From: Octopus sinensis
Taxonomy: Eukaryota
NCBI RefSeq assembly: GCF_006345805.1
Contig: NC_043015.1
Coordinates: 16,182,001 to 16,246,000, forward strand
Direction of reading: 5' to 3'
Length of the DNA stretch: 64,000 bases
Numbering within the stretch: the first letter of the stretch is position 1; the number at the start of each line of letters is the position of its first letter. The notes beneath the pieces were generated by a model that was not told the origin of the DNA, made no database searches, and saw nothing but the letters and a program-made list of their open reading frames with translations. Shown here one piece after another: positions 41,292 to 63,239 of the stretch. The translations under genes were made by a program, and so were the position numbers.

Positions 41292-41295
41292 GTGT

Positions 41296-41342
41296 ATGTA
41301 TATCTATATATATGTATATGTATATACATATTTATGTATGTG

Positions 41343-41392
<50 letters not shown>

Positions 41393-41429
41393 TATATATA
41401 CATATACATATATACATATACATATATAT
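41296..41429. repeat. (TA)n/(TATG)n microsatellite
   Basis: Seen directly. Confidence 0.9.
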
Positions 41430-41738
41430 AAGGTGGATGCGCACTGGCCCAGTGGTTAGGGAAGTGGACTCGCAGTCATAGGATTGCGGTTTCGATTCCC
41501 AACTGGGCGTTGTGGGTGTTTATTGAGCGAAAACACCTAAAAAGCTCCATGAGGCTCTGGCAGGGGGGTGGTAATCCCTGCTGTACTCTTTCACCACAAC
41601 TTTCTCTCATTCTTTCTTCTGTTGGCCTGCTTGCTTAGCCAGCGGGGTGGCGTCATTTGAAGGCTAAAACAATGCGAAGCGCATTGTGACCAGCGATGTG
41701 TAGCAACATCTGATAGCCTGGTCGGTCATGTGATTACA
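41430..41738 (+). mobile_element. tRNA-derived SINE family C
   Basis: A-box TGGCCCAGTGGTTAGG, B-box GGTTTCGATTCCC, body and tail ending gtcggtcatgtgat. Confidence 0.8.
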
Positions 41739-41751
41739 CATATATATATAT

Positions 41752-41783
<32 letters not shown>

Positions 41784-41869
41784 TATATATATATATATAT
41801 ATATAATATATATATATATATCATCATCATCATCATCATCATCGTTTAACGTCCGTATATATATATATA

Positions 41870-43115
41870 CGAGGGGCGTTCAATAAGTAATGCCCCTGAC
41901 CCACTTCCTATAGCAGTAGAGCAACGAAACCTGACACAGTTATTAGTCTTTGTCTACATAGGAAACACCCAGAGTTACGCATTTCTCTCATCGTTTGATG
42001 CAGCTCTGGAGACCGTTTTTGTAGAAGACCCCAGCTTGGTCCTCCAACCACGACGTGACTTCAGAAATCAAGGCTGCATCATCTGGAAAATGCTTTCCTT
42101 TCAAAAACAACTTCATGGCTGGGAAGGGGTGAAAATCAGAGGGTGCAAGGTCAGGAGAGTAGGGGGGATGGGGTGGAGTTCATAGCCGCACGCCTGTGCT
42201 TCTGATCTGGCGACAAGCGAGTTGTGGACCGGAGAATTGTCCTGCAGGAGGAGGATGCCTTTGCTGATCTTGCCCCGCCTCTTGATTTTGATAGCTTCTC
42301 TTAATTTCCTCAAAAGTGAAGCATAATAGGCTCCTGTAATTGTAGTACCCTTTGCCAGGAAATCTGTCATTACTACACCGTCCTGGTCCCAGAAGACTGT
42401 GAGCATGACCTTGCCAGCGGAGGGCTGTACCCTTGCCTTCTTTGGAGGAGGTGAGTCATGGTGCTTCCACTGCATTGACTGAGCTTTGGTCTCTGGATCA
42501 TAGTGATGGACCCAGGTTTCATCCTGTGTTATCAGTCTTTTGAAAAATTTTGACTCATCTTCTTGGCACATCTCCAAATTCATCCTCGTGCACTTGACGC
42601 GTTCTTGCTTCTGGAAAGGTGTGAGCAACCTGGGAATCCATCTTGCAGACACCTTTTCCATATCCAAATGGCCATGAATGATAGTTTCCACAGACCCGGT
42701 ACTAATCTTGACCTCATGGGCTATTTCGCGAATAGTTATGCGTCGATCTTCCAAAATGGCAGCCTCAACTTGACGGACAGATGCCCCATCAATGGCAGAA
42801 AGGGGGCGACCAGATCTGGGAGCTGTTTCCTCAGAGTTCCGACCATGTTTAAATTCACGATGCCAGCGTTTTACAAGGTCATATGATGGGGCATCCTCAC
42901 CATAAGTTACTTTCATTTCATCAAAAGTCTTCCGTGGTGTGCGTCCTTTCAAATACAAAAACCGGATCACTGCTCGACACTCAACAGGCTCCATTTCATA
43001 CTTGACTCAGTTCAAACACCTGTAAATCAGAAACCGCAATTAGTCCAGAGCTGTAATTTGCCACTTCATCTATAGAGATATAAATAATTGCACATGCAAA
43101 ATTTCAGCTAGATCA

Positions 43116-43116
<1 letters not shown>
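41870..43116 (-). mobile_element. Mariner (irritans/Himar-like, DD34D), one TIR lost
   Basis: The 3' TIR reads on + as TA|CGAGGGGCGTTCAATAAGTAATG; the 5' end is replaced by (TA)n. Confidence 0.9.
41943..42994 (-). pseudogene. Mariner transposase pseudogene (~350 aa; one frameshift, one nonsense codon)
   Basis: WIPRLLT, QDETWVHHYDPETK, QDNSPVH. A 1-nt deletion near 42172 precedes HPPYSPDLAPSD, and TGG>TGA occurs at 41990-41988. Confidence 0.9.
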
Positions 43117-43147
<31 letters not shown>

Positions 43148-43169
43148 CATATATATATATACATATACA

Positions 43170-43430
43170 ATGCAAAGCAGCTTGCACAACATTGCCTAGT
43201 AAAATTTGGGAACTGAAAACGAATAATATAGAATTCAACATGAAATGGGATATAGTAAGAAAAGCATGGCCTTATAAAAACGGTGGAGATGGTTGTGAAC
43301 TTTGTTCTATGGAAACATATGAAATTTTAAAACATAGGAGTAATACAAATCTGTTAAATAACCGTTCGGAGCTAGGATTATCTTGCATACATCACACAAC
43401 CAGTACGTTTAAATATTTTAAATAATAATA
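43170..43430 (+). mobile_element. Penelope GIY-YIG 3' fragment
   Basis: KIWELK..IEFNMKWDIV.KA.PY..G...CELCS.E..EIL...LLNNRSEL. Confidence 0.75.
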
Positions 43431-44899
43431 TTGTGACTATTCCTAAATTTTTCAAATTCTAATTCTTTATAACCAAATAAGAATGAATATACCATACTGG
43501 TTTTTAATTCAACATACATAGATTACTAAAAAACTTCATTGCAAACTTGGATTTAAATTCTCCCATTTTTCTTTTTTTTTTTTTTTGATAATCTCCTATA
43601 CTAAATAGTATAAAGTTTATGTCCCTAAAGAAACTACTCAGTTCACCTTGATTATCTCACTTCCATTTCTTAATATATCATTAACCTAGGATATTTTTAC
43701 CTAACTAATTAGCCTTTCTCCTTGGGTAGTAAATATTATGTCTAACAGATTCTATATTTTAATTCATTAATAACATTCCACTATCTACGAAATCTGAGTA
43801 ATTTACTCTTCTTAATTACTTCTCTTCATAAAAATAAATCACCTTCTACTAAACCTACAAATACCATTCTTCTTGATTACTCCTCTTCCAGTTTCCCTAT
43901 TATATATATTTGACCCCTAATATATTCACTTGATTAATAAGACTTTTGTCCTCAGTTAATATGTATTATGCCTACTCATAAGTGATAGATTTTTCTCCAA
44001 AATGAATAAATATTAGATTTATAATTTCTCCTTTAATCCAACATATCAAAATATTCAAAATCTACCAGCTAAGTATAAAGTTGATGTATATAAGTATAAA
44101 AGAATCTCTGTATTCTCTATAAGTGGTCACTGTGACCATTTGACATTGACCTAGTTTTCCTAATACAAAATCTGTTTGCCAAATAGTAGTAAACAGCCTC
44201 TGTAGCATTACAACCCTCTCTCTACCTTAATTTCTTTATATAGAACTTGGACATCTATTTCACCCTTATTTCTATAAATAGAAAATCTTTCTTGTCTCCT
44301 TTCAGTTGATCATTCTTTCCAAACCTTCTAGCAGTTCAAAACAACTGAATATTCTGAATATTCTTCAGTCAGTTGATAAACTCTACTACCTTAATGTTCT
44401 TAAAATTTAAATCGACATCTTTGTCTGGTGTGGTTAATAAGAGCTATGTATCCCTAACTTAAAGGTTGTGGAGAGTTCGTATATTTGCAAAGGAAGCCAT
44501 AAGGGTAAATTTTATATCTAGCAAGAGTGCGATTTCATGGGTAAAGACAAAGTTTCAGAATACTATTTAGGTTTGAGGAGTGCAATGGAAAGGAAAAGAA
44601 AAAGATAGAAGAGGGGTAATATAATGTGTAAAAGGGTTGGTAGTTCTCGACTGAAAAGAATTATATGAAAAAAGTAGGCTAGGGTAGAAAGTAGATTAAG
44701 TATATTAATATTTATTGATAATGTGGATTGGGGTAGGCTAGTGTAAGATATAGCTATTTTTATTTATTTATAATGTGGGTTGGATAAGCATAAGCTAGTT
44801 AGGTTCAGGAAGGTTAAGGGAAGGTAATATGCTGATAAGTAGGTCTGCTAATAACATTTAAGCTTGGAGAAAGTGGTGTATATAGGAATGAGGTTTAAC

Positions 44900-45250
44900 A
44901 AAACTAAGAGAATACGAATTGGCCTTTATGCAAACAAAAAAATTTAGTTTTCATATTTTTTATTAAGTAGAGTTGATTTGGCCATTAAAATTAGTAGTTT
45001 TTCTGTTATACAAAGCTCACAGCACTTATTGTTAATGGTATATGACGAAGTTTTTACTAGGATACGCCACTCTAAACGATAGTTGATTTTTTTGTCGTTT
45101 AATTCCCAGATGTAGCTACTAAGTCCTGTAGAGTTTGCTTTACTTCTATTTCTAAAGGTAGATTGGTGGGAATTGTATCTAAGTATCATTAATTTTTCAT
45201 GGCTCCTATATAAGATTTCTTATGGTTATTTGCATTGGTATATTACGCAT
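44900..45250 (-). mobile_element. Penelope GIY-YIG 3' fragment
   Basis: RYNSHQSTFRN....STGLSSYIWEL.....WRIL....Y....CELCITEKLLI. Confidence 0.8.
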
Positions 45251-45799
45251 TTTGTTTGACACCTATTTGAGAATTGACACTTATTTCTGTCTCTGCAGCC
45301 ACATAAATTATTCAGTTTATCTGTGCTTGTGTTATGTTGAGGGGGGGGGGGTTATTATTTATCAGGTCGTTGACTGTGTTGTTTGAGAGTGGATTATTAG
45401 GGACAAGATTTGTTCCATTTGCCTGTTGGCAGTTATGTTTCATGTTGGTATTTTTCCTAGTTTCGTAGAAGGCTTATTATTGTTGATCGAGAATGTGATG
45501 GTAGCTAGGTTACTAATTAAGCTATGGCCTACTCTAATCTTATTCTTAAAGATTCCTGAGTATTTGTTATTTAAGTTCAAGTAAGTCTCACTATGGAGTG
45601 AACTATGTTATATTTCAGCTGCATTATGAAGGGGATTATTAACCAGATCGTATCAGTATTTCGTTTATTTATATCTTTATTATTTTGGGTGTAGAAGCTA
45701 TCCTCAGTGTTTGTGTATAGTGTAAAGTTGTTGTTATTATTATTATATTTCTTTCTATAGTTACTCTTATTTTTATTACTGTTAGGGTCAGTTTTATTG

Positions 45800-46330
45800 G
45801 GGTTATTTCTGTACGGTTTTCTTAAGTTATATTCTTAAGGCAACAATCATCATTACAAAAGTCACACAACAACTAAATTTTGTTCTTCCTGCATTTGTAT
45901 CTGCTCCAGAATCTCTTGGAGATGGAGTACTCAGCATCCTCTTCCTCCAAATCATCTGCACTTCCTGTTTTCTGCCATTTTGGAGTAAGTGAACCTCCTT
46001 CCTTTCCACTCTTAAACTTTTGTTGCTTCTTTAGTGCATATTTTGCTGTACATTCTTCTGCTTCAGTTTTGAAGCAGTGTAAATATCAATAATTACATGA
46101 AACTACTGCTAAAACACTTTCAGACACTGGTAAATATTTTTAAGGTGTCAAAGACTTAATTATTTTCTTCAGTTTATAGAAGCCTATGAACTATATCTAT
46201 TGTGCCCCACTTTTGAATTTCCAAGGATATTTCCTTTATCCAACTTAAGATGGGCAAAGAAGATGCTCTAAATATACTTCTAATACAAAAAATTTTTAAT
46301 TGGAGTAATTGCAGCACTGCAAAGTTTTTG
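45800..46330 (-). mobile_element. Possible pogo/Fot1-like transposase C-terminus with decayed PHD-like tail
   Basis: An acidic stretch followed by a Cys-rich FWS..KC...CDFC.D..C segment; weak. Confidence 0.3.
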
Positions 46331-46439
46331 ACAATCCAAAATTGGCTAGTCTAGCGAGAGAGGTCTGTGATCCAGAATGAAATACTTCAAATGAAGACAT
46401 CAGGAAAAATACAACATTTACATTAGCAGGAGGGATGAT

Positions 46440-47270
46440 AATGATCATCATCATCAATATCATTTAACATTGATTTTCCATGTTGGCATGGGCTGAATGG
46501 CTTGAGAGGAACTGGTAAAGCCAGAGGTTGCACCAGATTCTACAGTCTGTTTTGGCTTGGTTTCTACAGCTGGATGCCCTTCCTAATGCCAACTACTCCA
46601 GAGTGTACAGGGTACTTTATATGTGGCGCCATCACAAGTACGTTTTAAGTGGCACCAGCACCAGTGCTTTTTATTTGGCACCTTGGTTTTAGGATCTCAA
46701 TTCTGTTGTGGTGGTTGGGTTTTCCCTAGTACAACAATGTGCCACATACCTTGGTCCTATGTTGTCTCGTTTGCAAGGTTCAGCATTTTAAGACCAGCCT
46801 TCAAAACTTCATCCCATGTCTTCCTAGGTCTCCCTTTCCCACAACTTCCTTTCATCTTAAGTGATCAGCACTTGTTCATGCAACTGTATTCATCCATCCA
46901 CATCACATGACCAAACCGGCAGTCTCCTCTCTTGTACATTGCATCTAATTCCTCTTATGCCCAACTTCTCTCTCAATACATCAATGTTGTCACACATCCA
47001 CATTGACATTGCACCTCCAGCAGAGCATACCAGCATCACATCCTCCACATTCAGAGCCCACATCACACTACCATGCAGCAGCATCACAGTTTGTACACAT
47101 GCATCATACAATCTTCCCTCCACTTAGAGAGAGATTAGAGAGAGAGACCTTTGGTTGCCAACAGAGGTAAAAGCCCTCTGAACTTTCTCCACCCTATACT
47201 TATTCTAGCTATTACACTTTCTGTACAATTCCATCTGCTGCTAATTAGGTCACCTAGGTAGCAAAAACTG
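46440..47270 (-). mobile_element. RTE-clade LINE 3' portion (RT C-terminus, 3' UTR, (GAT)n tail)
   Basis: FCYLGDLIS..ARI.IGWRKFRGLLPLL; GRLYDACVQTVML.GS..WAL; LREKLGIR.I..VQERRL; GRPRKTWDEV. Confidence 0.8.
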
Positions 47271-47277
47271 TAGTTGT

Positions 47278-47761
47278 GTGAGTGTCTCCTTCGATTTAGA
47301 TTCCTAACTACTCCCACATTTTGCGGTGCAGTTTAACCAAATTCGGGTATCTTATAGTCGTGATTCATATCGAGCCCGTCTGAGTATTAGCGTGCGTCTA
47401 CGATGAGTCTACGATTTTAAAAATAATTTAACATAATTTTTTATTCCATTTTAATGCATAATTTTTCGTGTGTTGATGGCGGCGGAGATGGCGTCCATGG
47501 TCACACCTGCACCTGTTTGCTTCTCCCCCTTCTTCCCTCCCTCGTGAAGCTGTGGGGAAGGGAGTGTAAGGAAATCAACGTCGTAAAGCGTTGTCAAGGA
47601 GACCAGCGTTCTTTTAGAACAATGACTTCATGGCTTGAAGACACCAAAACAGAAATGGCTAAGAAAGCCCGAATTGGCATCTATAAGGGAAGTAACTCTC
47701 TAAAAATGCTTATATAGTTATTTCCCTTACAAACCCGAGCAACGCCGGGCGATACTGCTAG
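47278..47761 (+). mobile_element. Non-autonomous Helitron, 5' truncated
   Basis: 3' hairpin CCCG-agcaacgc-CGGG followed by CTAG|T; the body is shared with 47906-48303. Confidence 0.75.
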
Positions 47762-47905
47762 TATTTACTAAAATTTAACTGTAGATGTGTGTGTGAGGAT
47801 ATGTGTGTAATTCCATATACTTAAGGCTGTGTATCTCATGCTGTGCTTTATGAGACATGTTTATATATATGCGCACGGGTAAGTATGCAGACACACGTAC
47901 ACACA

Positions 47906-48303
47906 TCTTTATATATAAAAGTGAGGTTGTGTGCTGTCTGTCTCCTACAATTTAGATTCCTAACTACTCCCACATTTTGCGGTGCTGTTTAACCAAAACC
48001 GGGTATCTTATAGTCGTGATTCATATCGAGCCCTTCTGGGTATTAGCGTGCGTCTACGATGAGTCTACGATTTAAAAAAAAATTACCATCAATTTTTCCC
48101 ATTTTAATGCATTTTTGGCATATATATAAGGGAAGTAACTCTCTAAAAATTTATTATTAAATCTCAGAACGTAAAAAGCTACAGTAACCCCCCCCCCCTT
48201 TGTGGTTAGCCATATTGAGATGGCTATTATACTTTACATCTCTAAAAATGCTTATATAGTTATTTCCCTTACAAACCCGAGCAACGCCGGGCGATACTGC
48301 TAG
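47906..48303 (+). mobile_element. Non-autonomous Helitron, complete
   Basis: A|TCTTTATATATAAA 5' end, 3' GC hairpin plus CTAG|T, no TSD. Confidence 0.85.
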
Positions 48304-48479
48304 TACAGGATAAACTTAAAGCAAGTAGTGGCAGATTGCTGTAAACTGACCACTCTCTACAACAATATCAAATTTCAGTCCCCCCCACCCCACCCGGAAA
48401 TAAGAAGTAATTTATGACACCACCACATCAAAACCTAGATCTTATCCTCAACTCTTTTAGCATCTTATCTCTTTATTTT

Positions 48480-48900
48480 AATTCTTTTGTTTTTACGATT
48501 ATCTTATATCTTTTTATATTTCTTTATATTTTTATACTTTATATTTTTATACTTTATGTTTTTACATTTTATATTTTCTTGTTACTCTAATTTTTATATT
48601 TATTATATTTATTTATATATATTTATTTATTTGTGTTCCCAGCATTATTATCTTTTTTTCTTTTTTCCGACTTTATTACACTGACCCTTTACTTACATTA
48701 TCCCCTTACTTTGCTTCTACCTTTAGCGTTTTCTCTCTCTATTTTATCATCTTCCTTCTTTTTTCTCCTTTTTCTTTCTGTCTCTCTATTTCCCTTCTAA
48801 TCTTTCTCTCTTCTTTCTATCTATTTTCCTCTCCATGTTCTCCCTACTTTTTCTTCCTCTTTTTTTTTCCCTCTTTCCTTCTCCTTATTTCTATTTCCTT
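48480..48900. repeat. Low-complexity T/C-rich tract
   Basis: Seen directly. Confidence 0.8.
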
Positions 48901-49131
48901 ACAAGGGGAATGAACCCATTCAAATCTATTTAACATTCACTCTATGTTGACTGGTGATACAGTATGGACAGATTTTCGAAATCCAGTGATACCCTACACG
49001 CCTTTTTGGTAGTGAAATTTTACAAATACACTTTCTCAGGGAGATATAATATACCTATCATTATGGATAATACTACATGTACTTTTCATATTTTTCATAG
49101 TGTGATGTAACTTTTTGGAATAACAATGCAT

Positions 49132-49222
49132 GCGGCTGAAGAGAGCTTTAAACCATCTTTTATATCTATTATACACTGATGTAAGAGTGGGCCATTTATA
49201 AAGCTTGAAACACATGTACCGC
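49132..49222 (+). ncRNA. Type I hammerhead ribozyme motif with intact core in a Penelope pLTR-like segment (~48900-49320)
   Basis: GCGG-CTGAAGA-GAGCTTT...AAAGCTT-GAAAC-ACAT-GTA-CCGC; triplet GUA, predicted cleavage after 49218. Confidence 0.8.
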
Positions 49223-49320
49223 GACAGCCTTTGTGTTCTGTTTTTGATTTTATTTTATATATACCCTCTCACCTCTGCCACTAGCTGGCGTCTACAGGTG
49301 CTTACACTTATCAAGTATTC

Positions 49321-49356
<36 letters not shown>

Positions 49357-49856
49357 TATATATATATATATACTGTTCAAAAATTGACATTTTATAAACA
49401 ATTTTTGGCGATCTTTCGTCTCTAGTAGACCTTTCCGTCGATTTCCGTAAAAAAACTTTTTTTTTTTTTACATATGGGCTTGCGGGAACTTTTGAAGTAA
49501 TGAGAGCGAAAGAGACTAAGAGAAAGCGATTGTATGACGAGGGAAGTTCTTTTGAAGTTACCGTCCAGGGGAAGCATTGATGTACATGTGTGTGTGTTTG
49601 ATGGGGTGTGAGAGACAGAAAGTATGTTGTGTAAGTGAAGTGCTTCTGTTAGTGTGTGTGAAGAGACAGAGAGAGTAATGTGTGAAAGAGAGAGATAACG
49701 GATAACTGAAATTTTTTACTCGGTGTATGTGTATATGTATGTGTGTGTGTATGTATCTATGTATGTGTGTGTGTGTGTATGTATGTATGTGTATGTGTGT
49801 ATGTATGTATGGCCGATTCAGTGTTTACATTATTTCGAGTTAAAACGAAAGATCAC

Positions 49857-50147
49857 CTTTGCCGGTTTATGTAACGGTCTGCTATGTAGAAAATAATGAG
49901 GTTGACTCAATGGAATAATGACAGTGATCGAAGATATAGACAAATTTTATAACTCTCCCGTCTTTTTCTCACCATTTCACCATCGTCACATCAACAGAGA
50001 CATTAAGGCTGCACAGTAGCAGTCGACAAGGCATGTATAACGATTAAATAAATAAAAAATTTGTCTATATCTTCGATCACTGTCATTATTCCATTGAGTC
50101 AACCTCATTATTTTCTACATAGCAGACCGTTACATAAACAGGCAAAG
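49857..50147. mobile_element. Palindromic MITE with ~90-bp arms
   Basis: ttatgtaacggtctgctatgtagaaaataatgaggttgactcaatggaataatgacagtgatcgaagatatagacaaatttt and its reverse complement. Confidence 0.8.
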
Positions 50148-50185
50148 ACCTGAAATTTTATAACAATACTTTTCAAACGGCATAG

Positions 50186-50860
50186 ATTACGAGGTAATCT
50201 TTTAGTTTGTGAGGGCGCGTGGCTTAGTGGTTAGGGCATTCGGCTCATGATCGTAAGGTTGTGAGTTCGATTCCCGGCGACGAGTTGTGTCCTTGAGCAA
50301 GACACTTTATTTCACGTTGCTCCAGTCCACTCAGCTGGCAAAAATGAGTTGTACTTGTATTTCAAAGGGTCAGCCTTGTCACTCTCTGTGTCACGCTGAT
50401 TATCCCCGAGAACTACGTTAAGGGTACACGTGTCTGTGGAATGCTCAGCCATTTGCACGTTAATTTCACGAGCAAGCTGTTCTGTTGATTGTATCAGCTG
50501 GGACCCTCGTCGTCGTAACCGGCGGAGTCTTTTTTTAATCTTTTAGTTTAGTGTGTTTAAAAAGGTAAACAAGCACGAAATAACAAGGGGAGATAAATAA
50601 GTCAGCTGTCTCGTTATTCGACTAATAGAGTTAAATTCCAAAATTCCTCCAAAATTGATTCAGGGTCGAGGACTTCAGGTTCGGGAACAATGAATATAGG
50701 TGCCGCTAATCTTCCACGTACCATTTCGATCGATTCGAAAGTAAAAATGATCTCGGTGTAAATAAACAATGAAAGCCTATTATCTCCCCTAGTTGTTATT
50801 TTCCCTGTCATTTTTATTTACTTCTTTAAACACACTAAACTGAAAGATTACTGATTACGA
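50186..50860. mobile_element. MITE whose left TIR is interrupted by the SINE
   Basis: aatcttttagtttagtgtgtttaaa versus tttaaacacactaaactgaaagatt. Confidence 0.6.
50209..50535 (+). mobile_element. tRNA-derived SINE family B, full length, with 14-bp TSD
   Basis: A-box GGCTTAGTGGTTAGG, B-box GAGTTCGATTCCC, T tail; TSD taatcttttagttt at 50195-50208 and 50536-50549. Confidence 0.9.
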
Positions 50861-51551
50861 AATTCATAAATTATTTGGTTAAACTAAAGCGTAAGTTTTA
50901 AAAAATAAATTTTTAGATTCATTTATTTTTTGTCTGAGTAATAGAAAAAGGTTTTAAAAAAGATCCCATGTATCATGGTGGGAGGAAAAAAATTCATAAA
51001 TACGGTGTTGAATGTGGTTTAACTATAGGAAAGAAAGTTAAAGGCGATTTAGCTGTTGTTTTTAGCACATTTCCACCATTTGGATTTTTTTTTAAACGCT
51101 TTTCTATTACTCAAACAAAAAATAAATGAATCTAAAATTTTTATTTTCAAACTTTTTTCCATTACACCCAAGCAAAAAAATGATTTACGAGTTTCTTTCT
51201 CTTCGAAAGTCCTCTCCCCACCCCCTCGGAAAAAATTTCCCCACAAATTTTTTTATAATCGCAATCTGTGTTGTTTGAAAGGTATTTATATAAAATTTAG
51301 GCTAATCGAAAGATCGCCGTTTAGGCTAAATTACGGTATGAGTACCATAATTGTCAAATTTAAGGCACGTGTATTTGTTTGTTTCTGAAGAAGATCGTCG
51401 CATTCCGTAAAAAAATTATTATTTTTTTATATATGTGGGGTGTGGGAAGGGCATCTTTGGAAGTCGGCGTAAAAGCGAAAGAGACAGAGAGAGAGAGCGC
51501 GTGCCGTGTGTGTGCGCGTATGTGTGTGTGTCACTGAAGCCATTCATACAT

Positions 51552-52047
51552 CCATAGTGAGGAAAGGCTGTACACTGAGTCAATCCCACTCACTAAGCAA
51601 CAGCAGCCATAATCCGAAAAGAAGAACAAGTCAACATCATCGGTAACCACTGAGCCGCAGGTTTTATTTCGGAGTTATCCCAGTTACCTGAGTTACTTCT
51701 CCTAGAAGGATGCCCTAACAAAGGCTAGGAGTCCTTCACACCCAATGGTTTAACCGCGCGATCGGGTATTCAGTCCGATTATTTCTATGTCTCTGCGCAT
51801 GATACAGCCTTAAGACATTTATTGGATGGCCGTTGACTCTCAAGAGTTCCTCCGCCCTTTGACGGGTTTTGTTTTTCATCCCGCAGGGTGATCAATAAAT
51901 ACCCTCCTCACCAAGCAAGCTTGGTGGGGTTGCCGGTTTAGTCGCCCACGACCCGACCATGCAACAGGTTGTACGGGGTTACACGTTACCAGTAGCACTC
52001 GAAAGTGACCTGACATAAATACATACATACATAACAACCTGCGTGCG
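51552..52047. mobile_element. GC-rich ~0.5-kb insertion with 31-bp direct repeats, probably of non-LTR retroposon origin
   Basis: tgtgtgtgtgtcactgaagccattcatacat at 51521-51551 and 52048-52078; (CATA)n near the right end. Confidence 0.6.
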
Positions 52048-52899
52048 TGTGTGTGTGTCACTGAAGCCATTCATACATATATACATAACCTCTCTCTCTC
52101 GCTTTTCCTCTGTCAATCACTCACTACAAAAAGTGAATAAAAAATTAGTTATCTTTCTCTCTCTTACATACACACACACACCAACACATTACTCTGTCTC
52201 TTCACAAACACTAACAAAAACACTTTGTCTCGCAAACTCCATCAAACACACAAATACACACGCGCGCACATACACACGCACACACATGTACACACACTCA
52301 CTCACACACACACATACATCAATTCTTCCGCTTCACGCCAACTTCAAAAGCACTTCGCTCATACAATCGCGCTCTCCTTCGCTTTCACGCCGACTTCAAA
52401 AGATTTTTTTTTTACGTATGGGCTTGCGGGAACTTTTGAAGTAATATACATACATATACACATACACCGAGTAAAAAATTTCAGTTATCTCTTTCTTTCA
52501 CACATTACTCTGTCTCTTCACACACACTAACAGGAGCACTTCACTTACACAACATACTTTCTGTCTCCCACACCCCTTTCTGTCTCCCACACCCCATCAA
52601 ACACACACACACACACACACATGTACATCAATGCTTCCCCTGGACGGTAACTTCAAAAGAACTTCCCTCGTCATACAATCGCTTTCTCTTAGCCTCTTTC
52701 GCTCTCATTACTTCAAAAGTTCCCGCAAGCCCATATGTAAAAAAAAATTTTTTTTACGGAAATCGACGGAAAGGTCTACTAGAGACGAAAGATTGCCAGA
52801 TAATTTATCTTATTAACAATTTTCTGTTAGCAAATGATTTTCTCTTACACAAACACGCAGCAATTTTGATTTAGAAGTATTTTAAAATTATTTGGAAAT

Positions 52900-54910
52900 T
52901 ATAAAGAGAAACGAATGGCAGAATCAGTGTCCATATTTTAAAACCAAAAAAAAAAAATTTTAATCGAAAAACAGTAGAAAGTTTTTGAATTGGGGTGAAG
53001 GCAGGGGAACTTTAAAAAACTATTTTATTGGATAATCGTATTCATTCCATTATGCAGAAGACAGAAACGAAAAAATTGGGAAAATTCTTAAAATAAAAAA
53101 ACATTTTTATTTTGTAATTTTGGAAAAAAATGTGGGGCACAAGTATCACTTCCGACATGCTAGAAACAACAGTTAAATGGCACGACTGCTGAAAAAGCTT
53201 CCTGGGTGTAATTGAGCGTATATAAAAACCTGATCTTCGATATAAACTTAAAAAGGAAGCTTCTCAGAAATCGTGTCGCATCGCTGTTGTTTCTAGCATT
53301 TCGGAGGTGATACGTGCGCCCCCACTTTTTTTTCCAAAATTTCTTCGGATTCCTTTTATCGATATAGGAGATTAGGATTTTAACGCCCCAAAACACGTTT
53401 TGAAAATTATAATTTCCACTTCCCCACCCCAATTTTTAAATTTTTAATTTTTTTCGAAATTTTTTTCTTTTCTTTTTGTAATCCACGTACAAAAAAATAC
53501 AGAGATTACGAATCTTTAAGATTTAAAAAAAAAATTTTCTTAAAGTAACACTCAAATTCCCTTCCCCAACCTCCGCCTATCACGGCAAGACTTACTTTTG
53601 TTTTCCAAAAAAAAACACCCCCTTTTTTTTTTTGTTTTTCTTTCTACACAAACCCCCGTTTTCGGCTGCGGAGAATACGAATCTGCAAAAAAATTGGCAA
53701 AAATCGGTATTTTGAAATTACCCCCTCTAATTTCTTCATTTAAAAATTTTTTCAGGTTTTTTTTTTTTAAATGTGCAGAATAATACGGAGATTATGATTC
53801 TGAAAAGAAACTTCCCAAAACTTTTGTAGTTACGGTTAGTGTTTAAGGGTTAAGATTAGGGTTACGGAAAAAGTGAAAAATGAAGAAATTGGAGGGAGGG
53901 GGAGAAATTTTCCAAATGCCGATTTTCGGCAATTTTCCGGAATCTCGGTATCCGAAAAAAAAAAAAGAAAATGGGGGAACGGGAGGAAGTCTTTCTTTCA
54001 ACGGCAAATCGAGAAATTAATTTTTCATAACTAAACACTTTTAAACTTCAGACACTGGTAGAATGTGTCATATAAAACATCTTTTACTCTTAGTGTTGCT
54101 GAGAAAAGTTTATATTTTCAAAGTTATTTCATGTTAAAGTTGTCTTTTCCCTTTCAACGGCAGATTGAGAAATTCATTTTTTGTAACTGAACATTTTAAA
54201 ACTTCAGATACTGGTAGAATGTGTCATATAAAGTATCTTTTACTCTTAGTGTTGTTGAGAAAAGTTTATATTTTTAAAGTTATTTCGTGTTAAAGTTGTC
54301 GTATTTCGGTAATTTCAACCAATCAATGATGTGTATTCAGCCGACTAAAATTACTATCGTTGTTTGTCAACAACTATCGGCGGTGTATACTGTAAATCTT
54401 CGAGTATAATCCGGAAGTTGTTGACAAACAACATCAGTAATTTTAGTCAGCTGAATACACGTCATTGATTGGTTGAAATTGAATGTTTCGCTTTTAGTTT
54501 TTTTGAGAGCGGGCAAGTTTTTTCAGAAATAATGTCGTTTAGCTGTTGTTTCTAGCATGTCGGGTTTTCTGGTGGTGGTCGGATATTTTTGACGTCTGCT
54601 ATTTCAGTAGAATTCTACGCATGTGTAAACATCAAATAAAAGTGAAACATTCGGTGTCACTAACTTCTTGAAAGCGGGGACGGGAGGAAACATGCATTGA
54701 ATGTTTCTTTTAAGAAGAATTAAAACTCAAAAAAAAAAAAAAATTCCCAAATTCGTAATGTCTGTATGTCGATTAAAGAAAATTTAATAAGTTGAAAATT
54801 AAGAAATTGGCGTGGGGAGCGGGAAAATTAAAATTTTGGAAAACGTGATTTTGGGGGCAAAATCGTATTCTCCTATATCGAAAACAGAAATCCGAAGAAA
54901 TTTTGTGAGG
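52900..54910. repeat. Nested MITE-like complex with inverted segments and duplicated arms related to the 39123 foldback
   Basis: 53330-53540 is inverted against 54750-54905. There are recurrent gctgttgtttctagc motifs, tandem arms at 53985-54300 and a palindrome at 54310-54480. Confidence 0.55.
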
Positions 54911-55611
54911 TATACTGGGTCATATTTGACAGATTTTCATTTTCTGCCAACACCAAACCAGAAAGTAGAATGTCGCAGCCAATTGCTCCACCAGTCCTGT
55001 TAATATGAGCGTCGTATTCATCCTGGTGACTACTTTTTAACCTTTTCACCTGTCACAAATGCTCATAAAGATATGATGTAAATAAATCATCGCTATTCCC
55101 AAATTGTTGCCTAATTTTATTATTGGCGAGCATCCATCACCCTCCTATAGTCGGTATGTGGGTGCTATCGTTTGGGTCAACAAAATTAAATGAACGGTTG
55201 ACAACTTACGAGTATAGAAGTTGCCGAAACCTGCATAGGAAACCCACCCATCGAATATCAAACGTACTTCGTGACATTTTGGTATATCACTATCATTATA
55301 TATACCGTATTTGATGGCCTGTATGACGCACGAGTGCATAGGACACACCCTAGACTAGGCTATACTTTTGTAAAATAAATTACCACTAAAATAATGTTTT
55401 AATTCCTCCACTTAACTGTATAACTTTATGCTATTATCGTAGGCGAGGCTACTCGACTACGTCTACATGACCTCTGATGTATAATTTCGGTCAACAGTCA
55501 CGAGTTTTGAGCCTTCTTTGAGTGCATTGGACTCGGGTATTTTAAAAACCATTTGGGGATTAAAAAAAAAAATTAAAAAGTGTGTCTTAGGCCATCAAAT
55601 ACGATACTTTC

Positions 55612-55730
55612 ATTTTGAGGTCGACTTTGCCTTCGTCCTTTCGGGGTCGATAAATTAAGTACTGGAGTCGATCTAATCGACTGGACCCCTCCCCCAAAAT
55701 TTCGGGCCTTGTGCCTAGAATAGAAGTATA
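55612..55730 (+). mobile_element. SINE core fragment
   Basis: gaggtcgactttgccttc.tcctttcggggtcgataaattaagtac, as in 1585-1766. Confidence 0.65.
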
Positions 55731-56920
55731 CTTTCATTTTTTGAGGACAATTTACTTTTGAATGTTTTAAGACGATAAACTGCATGTTAACCTATACATG
55801 TACAGATATATGTATATATATGATTAAGCATATTCCACATAACTTTCAGAAAAAATTGGATACTTTTTTAATGAAAGATTCTACAAGTTTCTTTCACATG
55901 GTATACATTATAATTATACCGGAATTTAGAATGAAAAGAAAAAAGTGGCGAGCATAGACACAAACACTTCAAAGTTATAATGTGTGTATATTTGTGTGTG
56001 CGCCCATTATTTATTTATTTATTTATTCATATTAAATTCCGGTATAGTTGTAACAATCAACACACTCTGAAAAGTATTTGTTGAAAATTTCGTTAAAAAG
56101 TATTTGTTTTTCTTTAGGTTATAGGGAAACAAACCGACTCGTGTGAACGTTGGCTTTCCAATATAATGGTAATCGTTATGTACACAATTTGAAGCGTATC
56201 TGTAGAGAATTTCATTTAAAATATCCACTTTTCTTAAAGTTATAAGGAATAAGTTCCCATAGTAGCAATTCGTAATTCGTTCCCAGAAAAATATTTTATC
56301 TATAAAATTTATAATACTCTAAGAAATGGCAATATGACAACAGTAGAATATAGAGAATATCTTATGTAAAGTAAAAAGAATGTCAAGATCATTTATAATA
56401 AAAAAAATATTATCATACTCGTTATCTGAATCACTTTCACTCACATTAGCCTCGCGCACACCATCACTTGAAGACGCGATAGTCGTTTCACAAGCATTCG
56501 TAGACGACTTGTAGACTTCTTTTAAAAAACAAGTCTATAGCTGTTTGCTTAGATGAAGCCTTTTTTTTTCCTCACTCTTTATAAATTTCGGTAATTTCTT
56601 GATGACACGCAAAATTTGGATCTTGAGATCGTAATCTTTGATATGGAAAACAAGAATCTGGAGAAATTTTTGCAAAAAAAAAAAAAAAAGATGGGTAGGG
56701 GTGTTTGCACCCGCCCAACAAGAAATTAATAAAAGATAGAAGAATGAATATAACACAAACCACGGATAATCTATATCAATAACATCATTTTGCTTAATGA
56801 TTCAATCTCATAAAATACAAGTTCCTTTTTTTTCATATCTTTAAATGAAGAAAAATGACACATAAAAGCGACAAAAGTAAAAAATGTACCCTCGGTAGTT
56901 TTACCTAAATAATGTACAAT

Positions 56921-57741
56921 GTTTCATTTCCACGAAAGTGAAACTAATGTCAACTCCGAGATCGCCATGAAAAAGAATCAGACGAAAAAATAAAACGCAT
57001 TTAACACTATACTGATGATTAACTATCATTCGTTTACCCGCCTCTTTTCTGAAATACAGCTTATTTCACTTAGTCCCCCATCAGTTACGTTCAACGTTCG
57101 AGATATCACCTATGTCTAATTATGAATGTATGTGTACATATATATGTTTATATGTTTTGCGAAAAATTGAGCAAGTTTCACTTTAGCCGATATCTACATA
57201 AATGTAATTTATTTTGGAGAACATAAACACGTCAATACTGATCGAAAAATTGATATCTAATACTTGTAATTCATCGCGTAAGATTGGTGCGAAATATCAT
57301 CTTTTACTCTGGTTGCAACAGTAACTTCAAAATGAAAACACTTGAAAACATTTCAAGAATCTATTTTTATGTTTAAATTTTTATATTGAATTTATCTAAA
57401 TTATGGCGATTTAACAATCTGGTAGTAATAGCTACGCGGTTTTGTTACTAAAAGAAAAGTGGAACAGTTACCTAGAAATTACTTTTAAAATATAAACTTC
57501 TAACAAAGGAAACAATCTCACAACTGTTGACAGATAAATGTCAATAAGTACAATAAATAATACTGAATGAATTATATCTAAGTAAAAAACGTTTTCTTAG
57601 ACCATTAACAAAAATTTGAATACCTGTAAATCCGCAGTTGGTGGACACATTCCAAAACGGCAGAATGACGAGGTCTATGGTTCTAAAGCGTGATAATGTT
57701 AAAAGTGAAAGTAAAGTTTCCCGGAACTGCCTTTCTCAGAA
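56921..57741. promoter_or_regulatory. Cluster of IRF-binding (ISRE/IRF-E) and STAT GAS motifs; candidate ZNFX1 promoter
   Basis: GTTTCATTTCC at 56921-56931 back-to-back with GAAAGTGAAACT at 56934-56945; AGTTTCACTTT at 57174-57184; AAAAGTGAAAGT at 57701-57712; TTCCCGGAA at 57718-57726 and TTCTCAGAA at 57733-57741. The surrounding DNA is not recognisably repetitive and retains CpG. Confidence 0.55.
57624..57690 (-). other. Candidate non-coding first exon of ZNFX1 (5' boundary is a guess)
   Basis: Minus-strand donor CAG|GTATTC at 57623, directly downstream of the IRF/GAS cluster. An alternative donor TAG|GTAACT lies near 57471. No transcript evidence is available. Confidence 0.3.
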
Positions 57742-57985
57742 TTTACATTCATTGGAGAATATATTATATGTCATCACACGTGATACGCCCATAATTGTAA
57801 GCTAAGAAGGTGTGTGTGCGTGCGTGTGTGTGTGTGAGTGTGTGTGTGTGTCTGTGTGTGTGAGTGTGTGTGTGTGGGTGTGTGTAGGAAGTGAAGGATA
57901 AAAATATGGCAAGAAGTGGACAGATGTACATATATACATACATACATCCATACATACATAGATGTATGTGTATTAATGTGTGTTA

Positions 57986-58373
57986 TCTCTCTCTATATAA
58001 AGCTGAAGTTGTCTGTGTGCGCCAGGTTTGGTAGCCTTCAACTAACACTATCTCCTCCGAGACCCTGTGGCGCAAGTTGACTAAAATTGAGAGTATAATA
58101 GAAGCGTTACTCTTCCTTCCGTAGAAGATAAAATTCAAATCGGACCATGTTAACAGCAAAAATTATTTACATAAAAAAGGTGCTTTTTTCTATGAAAATC
58201 CCTATTTTTTACGATTTTTTCACTGCTGTGTCGCCACTTTTCAGTGTATTTCAACCAGAAAAATGTTCACTTGAAGAGAATAACAAGCTACATAATGCAA
58301 AATTTTTACTTTTCAAAAATTCCAATTCCAGCGGGTCGAAACAAACCTGAGCAACGCTGGGCGATACTGCTAG
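57986..58373 (+). mobile_element. Non-autonomous Helitron with a different body but the same 3' end
   Basis: A|TCTCTCTCTATATAAAG 5' end; acaaacctgagcaacgctgggcgatactgCTAG|T 3' end. Confidence 0.8.
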
Positions 58374-61310: not shown

Positions 61311-62327
61311 GCACGCCAGCTCTATGTCAAACAGTTTGTTCTCGATGGAACATGAAGTGAGTGCTCTCTGTCATTGTACCAGCACCAGAGGCGTGTACTT
61401 TGTATACGGTAAATGTGAATGCAAAGAATACTCAGTAAACCATGGTGTGTAGACAACAGAGTGAAATTGTAGTGTGTAATGACAGCAGAGAGACCAGAAA
61501 TAGTTTCTTGATCTGTGCTGGTATCTCTTAAATGATGATAAATCTTCTTGTACACAAAATAATAACTTTATTCTTAAAATGTTCTGGTATATTTGAATAT
61601 TGAATGTACTAATCGATTACCATTTGGTAATTATGATACTTCTACAATTGAAAATAATTTTAATAAATAAGGAATTTATGTATTATGGTATTTGATATTT
61701 GTCTTTTGTCTACATTGTTCATATAAATGCCAGCACCAGGCAGAGGTGGTTTCCAGCAGTAACAACAGCAATGACAGCAGTAACAGAACCGTAAGAATAA
61801 AAAAATGGAAATATGTCAGTGGAACAGGATACTCCTTCAAGACCAGAGTTAGTTACCACAAGTCATCTCTTACAATCTCAGTGTTGTGATGAGAGTCAAG
61901 ATACCCTCTTGTGAGGAATGGTCTGAACCGAGAGAGTATATATGGTTTGTAGAAGTTCATGTTATTTCGTAGTGAAGTTGCAAAGTATCGGTTGGTTTGT
62001 TCATTTGGAATATTTATTGTTGGATTTTAACGTTCTTATTGCTGCTGTATTATCTTGTTATTGTATCAAACTGGTACTGTGTATCGTGTATTTTTAACCA
62101 TATATCACCCAGATGATTTAGTAAATATATAAATGATTCCCCTAATTAAACAGATACATGAAATATTATATACTTTTTGTAATAAATTTGTAATAACTTA
62201 TCTTTCATAGGCATTATATTAGAACAATATCACCTTCGTAATTTCGCTTTAACCTAAAATTCTGATATGTATATATATGTATACGTACATATGTGTATGT
62301 GTATGTATATATATATATGTATATACT

Positions 62328-62838: not shown

Positions 62839-63239
62839 AAACTGAAATGCGATTTTAGCGCTTGGATCGCTTTCAATGCCACTACATCCCGTCCGATTCG
62901 CTCCAAAATTTACAGGGACATGTAGAATGAGGTGACGATGCTCGTGGGCTACCTTAGAAATCCCTAGCTTAAAAGGTGTGGTTGCCAGGGGCCATCTTCC
63001 TCACTCACGCTATTTCCTCCTTTCCCTCTCTTACTCCCCTTCATGAATAACTTTGAGAAGTCCACTCCCGTTATTTAATGTATTCCCCCCAACTCCCTTT
63101 CACTTTCCCTTTATAAGTTCGTCAGGCGGCTTTCTTTGATGTATCTGTTTGCATTCATAGGGAGAATTATCATCGCTACCAAACAACACACAATCATGAG
63201 AACAAATATTATGAATCAGATATTCTTGCGTTCATTTAT

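What the first reader, a model, noticed from the sequence alone, without database searches (positions are those of the whole stretch)
56921..57741. Interferon-style IRF + tandem STAT switch upstream of an invertebrate ZNFX1
Seen: within 41 bp lie AAAAGTGAAAGT, TTCCCGGAA and, 6 bp later, TTCTCAGAA. Three more IRF-type sites lie within 800 bp, including a full ISRE match ACGAAAGTGAAACT back-to-back with GGAAATGAAAC on the other strand. A minus-strand splice donor follows ~80 bp from the cluster. Known: ISRE is RNGAAANNGAAACT, GAS is TTCN3GAA with TTCCCGGAA optimal, and tandem GAS sites bind STAT tetramers. Vertebrate ZNFX1 is interferon-stimulated, and molluscs have IRF and JAK/STAT genes and an inducible antiviral state but no recognised interferon. 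Inference: this is the ZNFX1 promoter, and octopus wires it as an interferon-stimulated-gene-like target, pointing to an IRF/STAT antiviral regulon in cephalopods. Caveat: single motifs occur by chance elsewhere in this window (GAS at 15090, IRF-like at 5681), and the link across 31.7 kb is unproven.
Basis: partly seen in the sequence, partly recalled or inferred. Interest (0 to 1): 0.8.

Follow-up and report, generated by a model that had tools for sequence, protein, structure and literature searches.

The report
IRF/STAT sites beside ZNFX1 leader exon
A tight, statistically unusual cluster of binding-site motifs for the antiviral transcription factors IRF and STAT lies against a small non-coding leader exon of the octopus virus-sensor gene ZNFX1, which suggests but does not prove interferon-style inducible control in an animal with no recognised interferon.

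Summary
As a cluster they are far beyond chance: 4 of the window's 13 AAGTGAAA and 3 of its 21 TTCN3GAA fall in one 821-bp interval (joint P about 5e-5). The interval is not a detectable repeat and has the highest CpG observed/expected ratio in the window.

The unproven link to ZNFX1 now has support. An Octopus vulgaris ortholog isoform (CAI9736493.1) begins with 20 residues that translate window 57682-57624.

"This is the promoter" is not shown. In that gene model the exon is internal. Its acceptor lies 18 nt from the IRF site, and another leader exon sits 4.5 kb further upstream (62208-62174). For that isoform the GAS-GAS-IRF block is therefore intronic. No TSS data could be reached.

Best reading: an IRF/STAT-type regulatory module at the 5' end of ZNFX1, acting as a promoter-proximal or intronic enhancer or as an alternative inducible promoter. 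Binding, inducibility and conservation beyond the sister species are untested. Verdict: partly supported, moderately interesting, a new member of a known kind.

The parts
57733..57741 (.). GAS-type site 2, TTCTCAGAA (TTCN3GAA), 51-59 nt upstream of leader exon B on the gene (minus) strand
   Evidence: unchanged in O. vulgaris
57718..57726 (.). GAS-type site 1, TTCCCGGAA (palindromic optimum), 6 bp from site 2. One of only two TTCCNGGAA in the window
   Evidence: unchanged in O. vulgaris
57701..57712 (+). IRF/PRDI-type site AAAAGTGAAAGT. On the transcribed strand it reads ACTTTCACTTTT, directly 5' of a branch-point-like TTTTAAC and 18 nt from the exon B acceptor
57624..57682 (-). 59-nt ZNFX1 leader exon B, with acceptor ctttag|AACC and donor CAG|GTATTC. 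It translates to TIDLVILPFWNVSTNCGFTG, the N-terminal segment of O. vulgaris isoform CAI9736493.1
56932..56945 (+). Full ISRE consensus ACGAAAGTGAAACT, in the intron about 680 bp downstream of exon B
56920..56931 (-). IRF half-site type GGAAATGAAACA, back-to-back with the ISRE
56928..56936 (.). Third GAS-type site TTCCACGAA, overlapping the ISRE pair
57064..57071 (-). AAGTGAAA (IRF-type core)
57174..57184 (-). AAAGTGAAACT, one mismatch from the full ISRE
57329..57340 (+). AAAATGAAAACA, a weaker IRF-like site
25942..57623 (-). 31.7-kb 5'UTR intron between exon B and the main coding exon. It is full of transposons (LTR element, mariner, SINEs, foldback MITEs)
20839..25941 (-). Main ZNFX1 coding exon. 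The ATG at 25936-25934 lies 5 nt after the acceptor ttcttgcag|GAATAATG
19479..19660 (-). Last ZNFX1 coding exon (RZ-type finger end, stop codon)
62174..62208 (-). Upstream leader exon A, the part annotated as CDS in O. vulgaris (MKDKLLQIYYKK). It has a weak donor AAA|GTATAT and sits just after a tRNA-derived SINE and a microsatellite
48000..58000 (.). CpG-undepleted domain, CpG o/e 0.8-1.3 against a window median of 0.31. The window maximum of 1.69 is at 56901-57300. The upstream edge of the domain coincides with exon B and the cluster
   Evidence: same pattern in O. vulgaris
63095..63117 (-). TATAAA followed by GGGAAAGTGAAAGGG, about 0.9 kb upstream of exon A. A possible further IRF-type site near the distal start region

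Best explanation
The interval is a cis-regulatory module in the 5' non-coding part of the Octopus sinensis ZNFX1 transcription unit.

Shown:
- A 59-nt leader exon (57682-57624) is spliced across 31.7 kb to the main coding exon.
- Two tandem STAT-type sites and one IRF/PRDI-type site lie 18-59 nt upstream of that exon.
- One full ISRE, an overlapping third GAS-type site and four more IRF-type sites lie in the first 760 bp of the following intron.
- The DNA is unique in the sample and CpG-undepleted.

Inferred mechanism:
- After virus sensing, octopus IRF and STAT homologues bind this module and raise ZNFX1 transcription.
- They could do so in two ways. One is as a promoter-proximal or intronic enhancer for transcripts that start at the upstream leader exon (62.2 kb). 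The other is by firing an alternative inducible promoter that uses the 59-nt exon as a first exon.
- I estimate the link to ZNFX1 at about 0.85-0.9. I put function as an IRF/STAT-responsive element at about 0.45. I put 'TSS within about 100 bp of the cluster' at about 0.2-0.25.
For: Gene identity:
- The window is O. sinensis ZNFX1 (100% to XP_029647960.1).

A 5'UTR intron exists and is conserved:
- The ATG lies 5 nt after an acceptor in Octopus and in Argonauta, and in the O. vulgaris paralog.

Exon B is a ZNFX1 exon:
- The N-terminus of O. vulgaris isoform P0122 is encoded by window 57682-57624, with exact GT-AG boundaries.
- That annotation used Iso-Seq, RNA-seq junctions and PASA (PMC10700109).
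- ZNFX1 is the only gene listed for locus L004, which spans the gene and 10 kb upstream of exon A.

Clustering beyond chance:
-.

Not a detectable repeat, and non-coding:
- No second copy was found in the window or in L002.
- No Pfam domain and no Rfam family.

CpG:
- The highest CpG o/e of the window falls here.

Biological plausibility:
- ZNFX1 is virus-induced in oysters (bioRxiv 10.64898/2026.05.15.723513).
- Oysters have a functional IRF/ISRE/GAS-reporter axis (PMC8218723).
- IRF- and STAT-like transcripts are listed for O. vulgaris haemocytes (PMC4199593).
- TTCCCGGAA as the optimal STAT site, including for insect STAT92E, is from my own knowledge.
Against: - No binding, expression or TSS data exist for this locus.
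- In the one visible gene model the exon is internal, so the proximal block is intronic.
- The proximal IRF-like motif is, on the transcribed strand, a pyrimidine-rich stretch next to a branch-point-like TTTTAAC. It could be a splice-signal by-product.
- Conservation could only be checked in O. vulgaris, where neutral divergence is about 2%. Unchanged motifs there mean little.
- No similar module was seen within 10 kb upstream of the two paralogous or related genes examined (L002, L003).
- AAGTGAAA-type motifs can be repeat-borne in this genome. Examples are SINE-borne GAAACTGAAAG and the 'Y' repeat array in O. vulgaris.
- High CpG o/e in 48-56 kb may partly reflect young transposons.
- The statistics are post hoc.
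Confidence: 0.45

Rival explanations
1. The exon and its link to ZNFX1 are real, but the motifs are not functional IRF/STAT sites. On this reading they are an accident of A/T-rich intronic sequence plus 3' splice-site signals, picked out post hoc because the gene is a known interferon-stimulated gene in vertebrates.
For: - GAS sites occur at the chance rate across the window.
- The proximal IRF motif coincides with a pyrimidine-rich tract and branch-point region 18 nt from the acceptor.
- Motif definitions were chosen after the fact.
- No informative conservation test was possible.
- GAS-like TTCCNGGAA pairs can arise for unrelated reasons, for example in a collagen exon in L005.
Against: - The joint clustering probability is about 5e-5 even when conditioned on the window's own motif totals.
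- All three AAGTGAAA[CG]T of the window lie here, with dissimilar flanks.
- One of them is a perfect 14-nt ISRE.
- The sites lie at the 5' leader exon of a gene that is virus-induced in other molluscs.
- The region has the window's peak CpG o/e.
Confidence: 0.3
2. It is a functional regulatory module read by other factors that share these motifs. PRDM1/Blimp-1 recognises AGTGAAAGT. ETS factors recognise CCGGAA. Ken/BCL6-type repressors recognise GAGAAAG overlapping STAT sites. Control would then be developmental or tissue-specific rather than antiviral.
For: - AAAGTGAAAGT at 57702-57712 matches the PRDI/Blimp-1 type site.
- TTCCCGGAA contains CCGGAA on both strands.
- TTCTGAGAAAG on the gene strand contains GAGAAAG.
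- The motif-to-factor assignments are from my own knowledge.
- Clustering and CpG features argue for function but not for a particular factor.
Against: - A full ISRE, several IRF cores and tandem GAS sites together at a ZNFX1 leader exon are more simply explained by IRF and STAT.
- ZNFX1 is virus-induced in oysters.
Confidence: 0.15
3. The motif-bearing DNA derives from a mobile or locally amplified repeat that happens to carry AAAGTGAAA(C/G)T motifs. The 'Y' element upstream of the O. vulgaris gene is an example. The DNA is either inert or was co-opted later, in the way MER41-type elements carry interferon-responsive sites in primates.
For: - Four copies of a roughly 280-bp repeat lie 3-7 kb upstream of exon A in O. 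vulgaris. Each copy carries ATTAAAGTGAAACT and ATTAAAGTGAAAGT.
- The same 11-12-mers occur at the window sites.
- The cluster directly abuts a microsatellite, a SINE-like segment and a LINE.
- A tRNA-SINE carries GAAACTGAAAG.
Against: - An nhmmer profile of Y and shuffled-control Smith-Waterman alignments find no homology beyond the motif itself.
- There is no second copy of 56.7-57.8 kb in about 160 kb of octopus DNA sampled.
- The sample is too small to exclude families below about 10^4 copies.
Confidence: 0.1

Closest known systems
Vertebrate interferon-stimulated gene promoters with ISRE and GAS elements (for example the composite GBP and IRF1-type promoters); vertebrate ZNFX1 is itself interferon-stimulated (own knowledge)
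   Same: - The same consensus sequences: a full RNGAAANNGAAACT, AAGTGA-type IRF cores, and TTCN3GAA including the optimal TTCCCGGAA.
- Homotypic clustering and tandem GAS sites.
- An orthologous target gene.
   Different: - No interferon, ISGF3 or IRF9 is known in cephalopods.
- Most sites lie downstream of a short leader exon, and the proximal block is intronic in the known isoform.
- No binding or induction data exist.
ADAR1 p150-type arrangement: an interferon-inducible alternative promoter and first exon (exon 1A with an ISRE) beside constitutive leader exons (own knowledge)
   Same: - Two alternative 5' leader exons feed one main coding exon.
- The motif cluster sits at only one of them.
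- The choice of leader changes the upstream ORF context.
   Different: - Use of exon B as a first exon is not shown.
- It has a working 3' splice site, so it would have to be a hybrid first/internal exon.
Oyster IRF/ISRE and interferon-like system (CgIRF1/8, CgIFNLP, CgIFNR-3; PMC8218723) and virus-induced oyster ZNFX1 (bioRxiv 10.64898/2026.05.15.723513)
   Same: - A mollusc with IRF-dependent, poly(I:C)- and virus-inducible antiviral genes, ZNFX1 among the induced genes.
- ISRE and GAS reporters respond to oyster components.
   Different: - The oyster work rests on expression and heterologous reporters, not on mapped native ISRE/GAS sites at ZNFX1.
- Nothing comparable exists for cephalopods.
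Drosophila STAT92E target enhancers with clustered TTCN3GAA sites in a first intron (Socs36E, the source of the 10xSTAT reporter; own knowledge)
   Same: - An invertebrate setting.
- Paired 3n STAT sites near the 5' end or first intron of an inducible gene.
- TTCCCGGAA is the preferred site.
   Different: - That enhancer has no IRF component, because insects lack IRFs.
- Here the STAT sites are paired with IRF-type sites.
Transposon-borne interferon-responsive enhancers (primate MER41-type; own knowledge)
   Same: AAAGTGAAA(C/G)T pairs are carried by a locally amplified repeat upstream of the O. vulgaris gene.
   Different: - The window cluster itself shows no homology to that repeat.
- The genome-wide copy number is unknown.

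Membership tests
ISRE / IRF-binding element | Sequence match to RNGAAANNGAAACT or to the AANNGAAA / AAGTGA core | tested here: met
   One perfect 14-mer at 56932-56945 (0.14 expected per window). Four AAGTGAAA within 780 bp.
ISRE / IRF-binding element | Bound by an IRF-family protein of the same organism | not testable with these tools
   Needs EMSA, DAP-seq or ChIP with octopus IRFs.
ISRE / IRF-binding element | Confers virus-, dsRNA- or cytokine-inducible transcription | not testable with these tools
   No octopus challenge data for ZNFX1 were found.
GAS / STAT-binding element (tandem) | TTCN3GAA palindrome; two sites close enough for cooperative binding | tested here: met
   TTCCCGGAA and TTCTCAGAA lie 6 bp apart, the only GAS pair within 30 bp in the window, L002 or L004 apart from its own ortholog. 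Simulated 64-kb windows contain such a pair 17-24% of the time, so the pair alone is weak evidence.
GAS / STAT-binding element (tandem) | Bound by STAT dimers or tetramers | not testable with these tools
   Needs protein-DNA assays.
Core promoter of ZNFX1 | A transcription start site within about 100 bp | tested here: inconclusive
   The adjacent exon is a real ZNFX1 leader exon. In the visible O. vulgaris model it is internal, with an acceptor 18 nt from the IRF site and another exon 4.5 kb upstream. The UTR structure of the second isoform (P0123) is not available. No transcript contigs were found.
Core promoter of ZNFX1 | Exon next to the element is spliced to the ZNFX1 coding exon | tested here: met
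   The P0122 N-terminus equals the translation of 57682-57624 joined to exon C at 25941. The A-B-C reading frame is also intact in O. sinensis.
Conserved cis-regulatory module | Sites retained across species at neutral saturation | tested here: inconclusive
   All sites are identical in O. vulgaris, but the region is about 98% identical overall (30 differences in 1.47 kb). The Argonauta upstream 10 kb is all transposons. No other octopod ortholog could be reached.
Transposon-derived enhancer | Sequence is a member of a repeat family | tested here: not met
   No other copy in the window or L002. No homology to the Y repeat. Power is limited to very high-copy families.
Unmethylated (CpG-undepleted) regulatory region | Local CpG o/e near or above 1 in a CpG-depleted background | tested here: met
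   CpG o/e is 1.1-1.7 across 56.4-57.5 kb and reaches the window maximum, against a median of 0.31. The pattern is mirrored in O. vulgaris. Methylation itself was not measured.

The most novel reading that the evidence does not exclude
Octopus ZNFX1 carries a genuine IRF+STAT composite switch at an inducible alternative leader exon. That would mean the cis-regulatory logic of vertebrate interferon-stimulated genes (ISRE plus tandem GAS) already operated on this ancient RNA sensor in the protostome-deuterostome ancestor, or was rebuilt in cephalopods. The composite motif could then be used to define a cephalopod antiviral regulon. A further twist is that IRF-site-bearing repeats, such as the Y array upstream of the O. 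vulgaris gene, may be spreading such sites.
Probability: 0.3. Interest if true: 0.75.

Novelty: new member of a known kind. Interest (0 to 1): 0.5.

Why it matters
Whether invertebrates that lack a recognised interferon still run an 'interferon-stimulated-gene-like' programme through IRF and STAT factors is an open question in comparative immunology. The evidence so far is mostly expression data and heterologous reporters from oysters.

A native, mapped ISRE/GAS module at the leader exon of a conserved antiviral sensor would give cephalopod immunology a concrete element to mutate. It would also provide a motif to scan the genome with, and a pair of leader exons whose use can be measured after challenge.

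The work also fixes the gene structure. ZNFX1 in O. sinensis has at least two 5' leader exons, 31.7 and 36.2 kb upstream of its coding exon. At least the coding-sequence range on record for the O. sinensis gene does not include them.

Tried and rejected
- **Transcript evidence through the protein collection.** A search with the 282-aa N-terminus found only an O. bimaculoides fragment of the paralog and no transcript-derived contigs. The exact look-up of P0001 returned only the genome record, with the CDS range and no UTRs.
- **O. vulgaris P0002 as the ortholog.** Rejected. It is 95% identical in the CDS, its flanks are not colinear, and it is a truncated paralog next to a collagen IV gene. The true ortholog came from the cluster members.
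- **Conservation in Argonauta.** The 10 kb upstream of P0003 is LTR, LINE, SINE and microsatellite sequence with no alignable block. L003 never appeared in the script sandbox, so it was only read and pattern-searched.
- **Hidden gene or RNA under the cluster.** No Pfam domain in six frames of 54.9-58.5 kb, no Rfam family in the window, and ORFs of 65 aa or more in 43-58 kb look like transposon debris or low complexity.
- **The cluster as a copy of the Y repeat or the LINE 3' end.** No significant homology. Two microsatellites and a SINE-like segment separate it from the LINE ORF.
- **Similar modules upstream of paralogs.** None in L002 or L003. Tandem TTCCNGGAA in L005 turned out to be a collagen Gly-X-Y exon.
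- **NF-kB sites in the cluster.** None.
- **Donor strength as independent evidence.** The exon B donor is only at the 93rd percentile of minus-strand GTs, with 153 as good or better in 38 kb, so the sequence alone would not have identified it.
- **Literature.** No paper was found on cephalopod ZNFX1.
Full report
**What the window is.** The 1734-codon minus-strand ORF at 20831-26035 is 100% identical to Octopus sinensis NFX1-type zinc finger-containing protein 1 (XP_029647960.1, 1759 aa). The exact-protein look-up places it on CM016877.1 of GCA_006345805.1. The protein starts at ATG 25936-25934, only 5 nt after a good 3' splice site (ttcttgcag|GAATAATG). The big exon runs 25941-20839, and a last coding exon runs 19660-19479. 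An acceptor 5 nt before the ATG is also present in an Argonauta hians ZNFX1-like gene (ttttcttttag|AAATAATG) and in an O. vulgaris paralog. A 5'UTR intron is therefore a conserved feature, and at least one non-coding leader exon must lie upstream.

**Checking the observation.** All motifs are at the stated coordinates:
- AAAAGTGAAAGT at 57701-12.
- TTCCCGGAA at 57718-26.
- TTCTCAGAA at 57733-41.
- ACGAAAGTGAAACT at 56932-45.
- GGAAATGAAACA on the other strand at 56920-31.
- Further IRF-type cores at 57064-71(-), 57174-84(-) and 57329-40(+).
- The donor CAG|GTATTC, which ends a potential exon at 57624.

**Is it more than chance?** Single GAS sites occur exactly at the chance rate (21 observed, 21.8 expected). 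AAGTGAAA is about twofold over shuffles window-wide (13 against 6.6). The perfect ISRE 14-mer has an expectation of 0.14 per window. The clustering is the real signal:
- All three AAGTGAAA[CG]T of the window lie in 56936-57712, and 4 of 13 AAGTGAAA lie within 780 bp.
- With the window's own totals placed at random, at least 4 AAGTGAAA in some 821 bp has P = 0.005. The joint probability with at least 3 GAS in the same interval is 4.5e-5.
- 3 Mb of order-3 and order-5 Markov sequence trained on the rest of the window produced no such quadruple.
- The proximal composite alone (tandem GAS within 30 bp plus an IRF-like site within 60 bp) appears in 0.25-2% of simulated windows.

The flanks of the sites are unrelated, so they are not internal duplicates. 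The caveats are that the definitions are post hoc and that real DNA is clumpier than these null models.

**Is it a repeat or a gene?** Self-comparison of 56.0-58.5 kb against the window, and a more sensitive search against the window and the O. vulgaris paralog locus, found only microsatellite matches. Six-frame Pfam scans of 54.9-58.5 kb were empty. Rfam found nothing in the window. ORFs in 43-58 kb are transposon debris or low complexity. Reading the gene (minus) strand from upstream toward the cluster, the order is:
- a LINE reverse-transcriptase ORF (59598-58519);
- a microsatellite;
- a roughly 380-bp SINE-like segment;
- a (TATG)n/(CA)n microsatellite (57985-57805).

The cluster begins 60 bp after that last microsatellite. 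The power to detect repeats is low, since about 160 kb of a 2.7-Gb genome was sampled.

**The link to ZNFX1.** The 90%-identity cluster of the O. sinensis protein holds two O. vulgaris isoforms. CAI9736494.1 (1759 aa) starts at MDNNGK. CAI9736493.1 (1792 aa) starts MKDKLLQIYYKK-TIDLVILPFWNVSTKCGFTG-IMDNNGK.
- The middle 20 residues are the translation of window 57682-57624 on the minus strand. The segment is bounded by ctttag|AACC and CAG|GTATTC.
- The first 12 residues come from another small exon ('A') at window 62208-62174, with donor AAA|GTATAT.
- The O. vulgaris gene spans 53.3 kb and is the only gene called in its locus. That locus is colinear with the window at 97.6-99.5% identity apart from a few species-specific insertions.
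- The annotation was built from Iso-Seq, RNA-seq junctions, EVM and PASA updates (PMC10700109). The A-B-C structure is therefore probably transcript-supported, although I could not see the reads.
- The N-terminal extension is not shared with other ZNFX1 proteins, so exons A and B are best regarded as 5'UTR exons.
- By sequence alone the exon B donor is unremarkable: 93rd percentile, with 153 equal or better GTs in 38 kb. The exon A donor is weak.

**What this does to the 'promoter' reading.** In the visible isoform exon B is internal.
- On the transcribed strand the order is: GAS2 (-59 to -51), GAS1 (-44 to -36), the IRF-type site (-30 to -19), a branch-point-like TTTTAAC, the acceptor, exon B, the donor. 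The ISRE pair and three further IRF-type sites follow within 760 bp of the next intron.
- The proximal IRF motif reads ACTTTCACTTTT on that strand, so it could be part of the 3' splice-site region.
- A TATA-like CATATAATATATTC and a CCAAT box lie upstream of the GAS sites (57770-57748), and a TCATTC initiator-like sequence lies inside exon B. None of this locates a TSS.
- The second isoform could start at exon B or could be A-C. In A-C the exon A ATG opens a short upstream ORF. The data on hand cannot tell the two apart.
- I put a TSS at the cluster at 0.2-0.25.

**Context that favours a regulatory region.** The window is strongly CpG-depleted (median o/e 0.31; gene body 0.1-0.46). The stretch 48-58 kb has o/e 0.8-1.3. 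The maximum of the whole window (1.69) is at 56901-57300, and the domain's upstream edge is at exon B. The pattern is mirrored in O. vulgaris, and it is absent from the 10 kb upstream of the paralog. Part of the 48-56 kb signal may come from young foldback elements, but the peak itself lies in unique DNA.

**Context that urges caution.**
- Conservation is uninformative. All sites are identical in O. vulgaris, but there are only 30 differences in 1.47 kb.
- No comparable module lies within 10 kb upstream of the O. vulgaris paralog or the Argonauta gene.
- IRF-like motifs can ride on repeats here. The tRNA-SINE just upstream of exon A and its copy at 4.1 kb both carry GAAACTGAAAG.
- In O. vulgaris, 3-7 kb upstream of exon A (beyond the window end), four copies of a roughly 280-bp repeat each carry ATTAAAGTGAAACT and ATTAAAGTGAAAGT.
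- A profile search and shuffled-control alignments show no homology between that repeat and the window cluster beyond the motif itself.
- The motifs are also compatible with PRDM1/Blimp-1, ETS and Ken/BCL6-type factors (own knowledge).

**Comparison with what is known.**
- The sequence features are those of vertebrate ISRE and GAS elements. The target is the ortholog of a vertebrate interferon-stimulated RNA sensor (own knowledge; ZNFX1 literature listed).
- In molluscs, ZNFX1 is among the genes induced by OsHV-1 in oysters and is counted among antiviral genes in Aplysia.
- Oysters have an IRF axis, an interferon-like cytokine and a receptor that activates ISRE and GAS reporters.
- IRF- and STAT-like transcripts are listed for O. 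vulgaris haemocytes.
- No paper on cephalopod ZNFX1 or its regulation was found.
- The two-leader-exon layout recalls the interferon-inducible alternative promoter of ADAR1. Paired STAT sites near a first intron recall Drosophila Socs36E (own knowledge).
- On these grounds it is a new member of a known kind, not a new kind.

**Verdict.** The claim that this is the promoter is not established and is partly contradicted by an upstream leader exon and a functional acceptor. The IRF/STAT wiring is a good, directly testable hypothesis with no functional evidence yet. Confidence that it is a working IRF/STAT-responsive element of ZNFX1 is about 0.45. Interest is 0.5.

Noticed in passing
L004 3200-7200 (O. 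vulgaris, 3-7 kb upstream of ZNFX1 exon A; lies beyond the window's right end): Four copies of a roughly 280-bp repeat ('Y'). One copy is split by a foldback element. Each starts after a microsatellite and carries a hairpin AGTTTCACTTTAAT...ATTAAAGTGAAACT followed by ATTAAAGTGAAAGT. That gives 11 AAGTGAAA in 3.7 kb. No other copy was found in about 160 kb sampled.
   Followed up: partly
L003 23990-24060 (Argonauta hians, 6 kb downstream of a ZNFX1-like gene): A perfect NF-kB consensus GGGAATTTCC is followed at once by GAAAACGAAAAGTGAAAGAAAGTGAAAGAAAAAGAAA, an enhanceosome-like NF-kB plus multimerised IRF-type block. It sits among LINE fragments and tandem repeats. Its target gene is unknown.
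   Followed up: partly
window 62573-62587(-) and 4081-4095(+): The ISRE-core-like GAAACTGAAAG is part of a tRNA-derived SINE family, with copies at about 3.9-4.3, 10.1-10.5, 34.3-34.6 and 62.3-62.7 kb and in L002. Genome scans for IRF sites in octopus must mask it.
   Followed up: partly
window 57650-57648 with 25941-25934: Exon B contains an ATG that, after splicing to the coding exon, opens a 10-codon upstream ORF (MCPPTADLQE). Its stop overlaps the main start (TAATG). TAATG at the start codon is also present in Argonauta. In the A-B-C isoform the exon A ATG is instead in frame and adds 33 residues.
   Followed up: partly
window 63095-63117(-): TATAAA directly followed by GGGAAAGTGAAAGGG, about 0.9 kb upstream of exon A, with consensus-like donors (G|GTGAGT, A|GTAAGA) 70-100 bp downstream. 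It is identical in O. vulgaris. It could mark a further upstream start or leader exon.
   Followed up: no
window 1001-2000: An isolated CpG-undepleted kilobase (o/e 1.46) about 17 kb downstream of the ZNFX1 stop, in otherwise strongly depleted DNA. It could be a young insertion or the 5' end of the next gene.
   Followed up: no
L002 and L005 (O. vulgaris and Argonauta): A truncated ZNFX1 paralog (1226 and 1178 aa) lies convergent with a collagen IV gene in both species, so this paralog arrangement predates the Octopus-Argonauta split. The O. vulgaris paralog protein is a mosaic: long stretches nearly identical to the main gene alternate with diverged blocks, which suggests gene conversion. Collagen Gly-X-Y exons create tandem TTCCNGGAA matches (L005 21177-21212).
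   Followed up: partly
window 26230-26600(-), 29700-33400, 42113-42994(-), 53995-54480, 58519-59598(-): The 31.7-kb leader intron and its surroundings are largely transposons. They include a tRNA-SINE 300 bp from the coding exon, LTR-retrotransposon gag/RT/RNase H/integrase pieces, a mariner transposase ORF, foldback MITEs and a LINE RT ORF.
   Followed up: partly
L004 31576-38163 and 45761-48606 versus window 41.8 kb and 34.2 kb: Two insertions of about 6.6 kb and 2.8 kb are present in the O. vulgaris intron and absent from O. sinensis. The first has CpG o/e up to 1.8. These are recent transposon activity or deletions since the species split.
   Followed up: no
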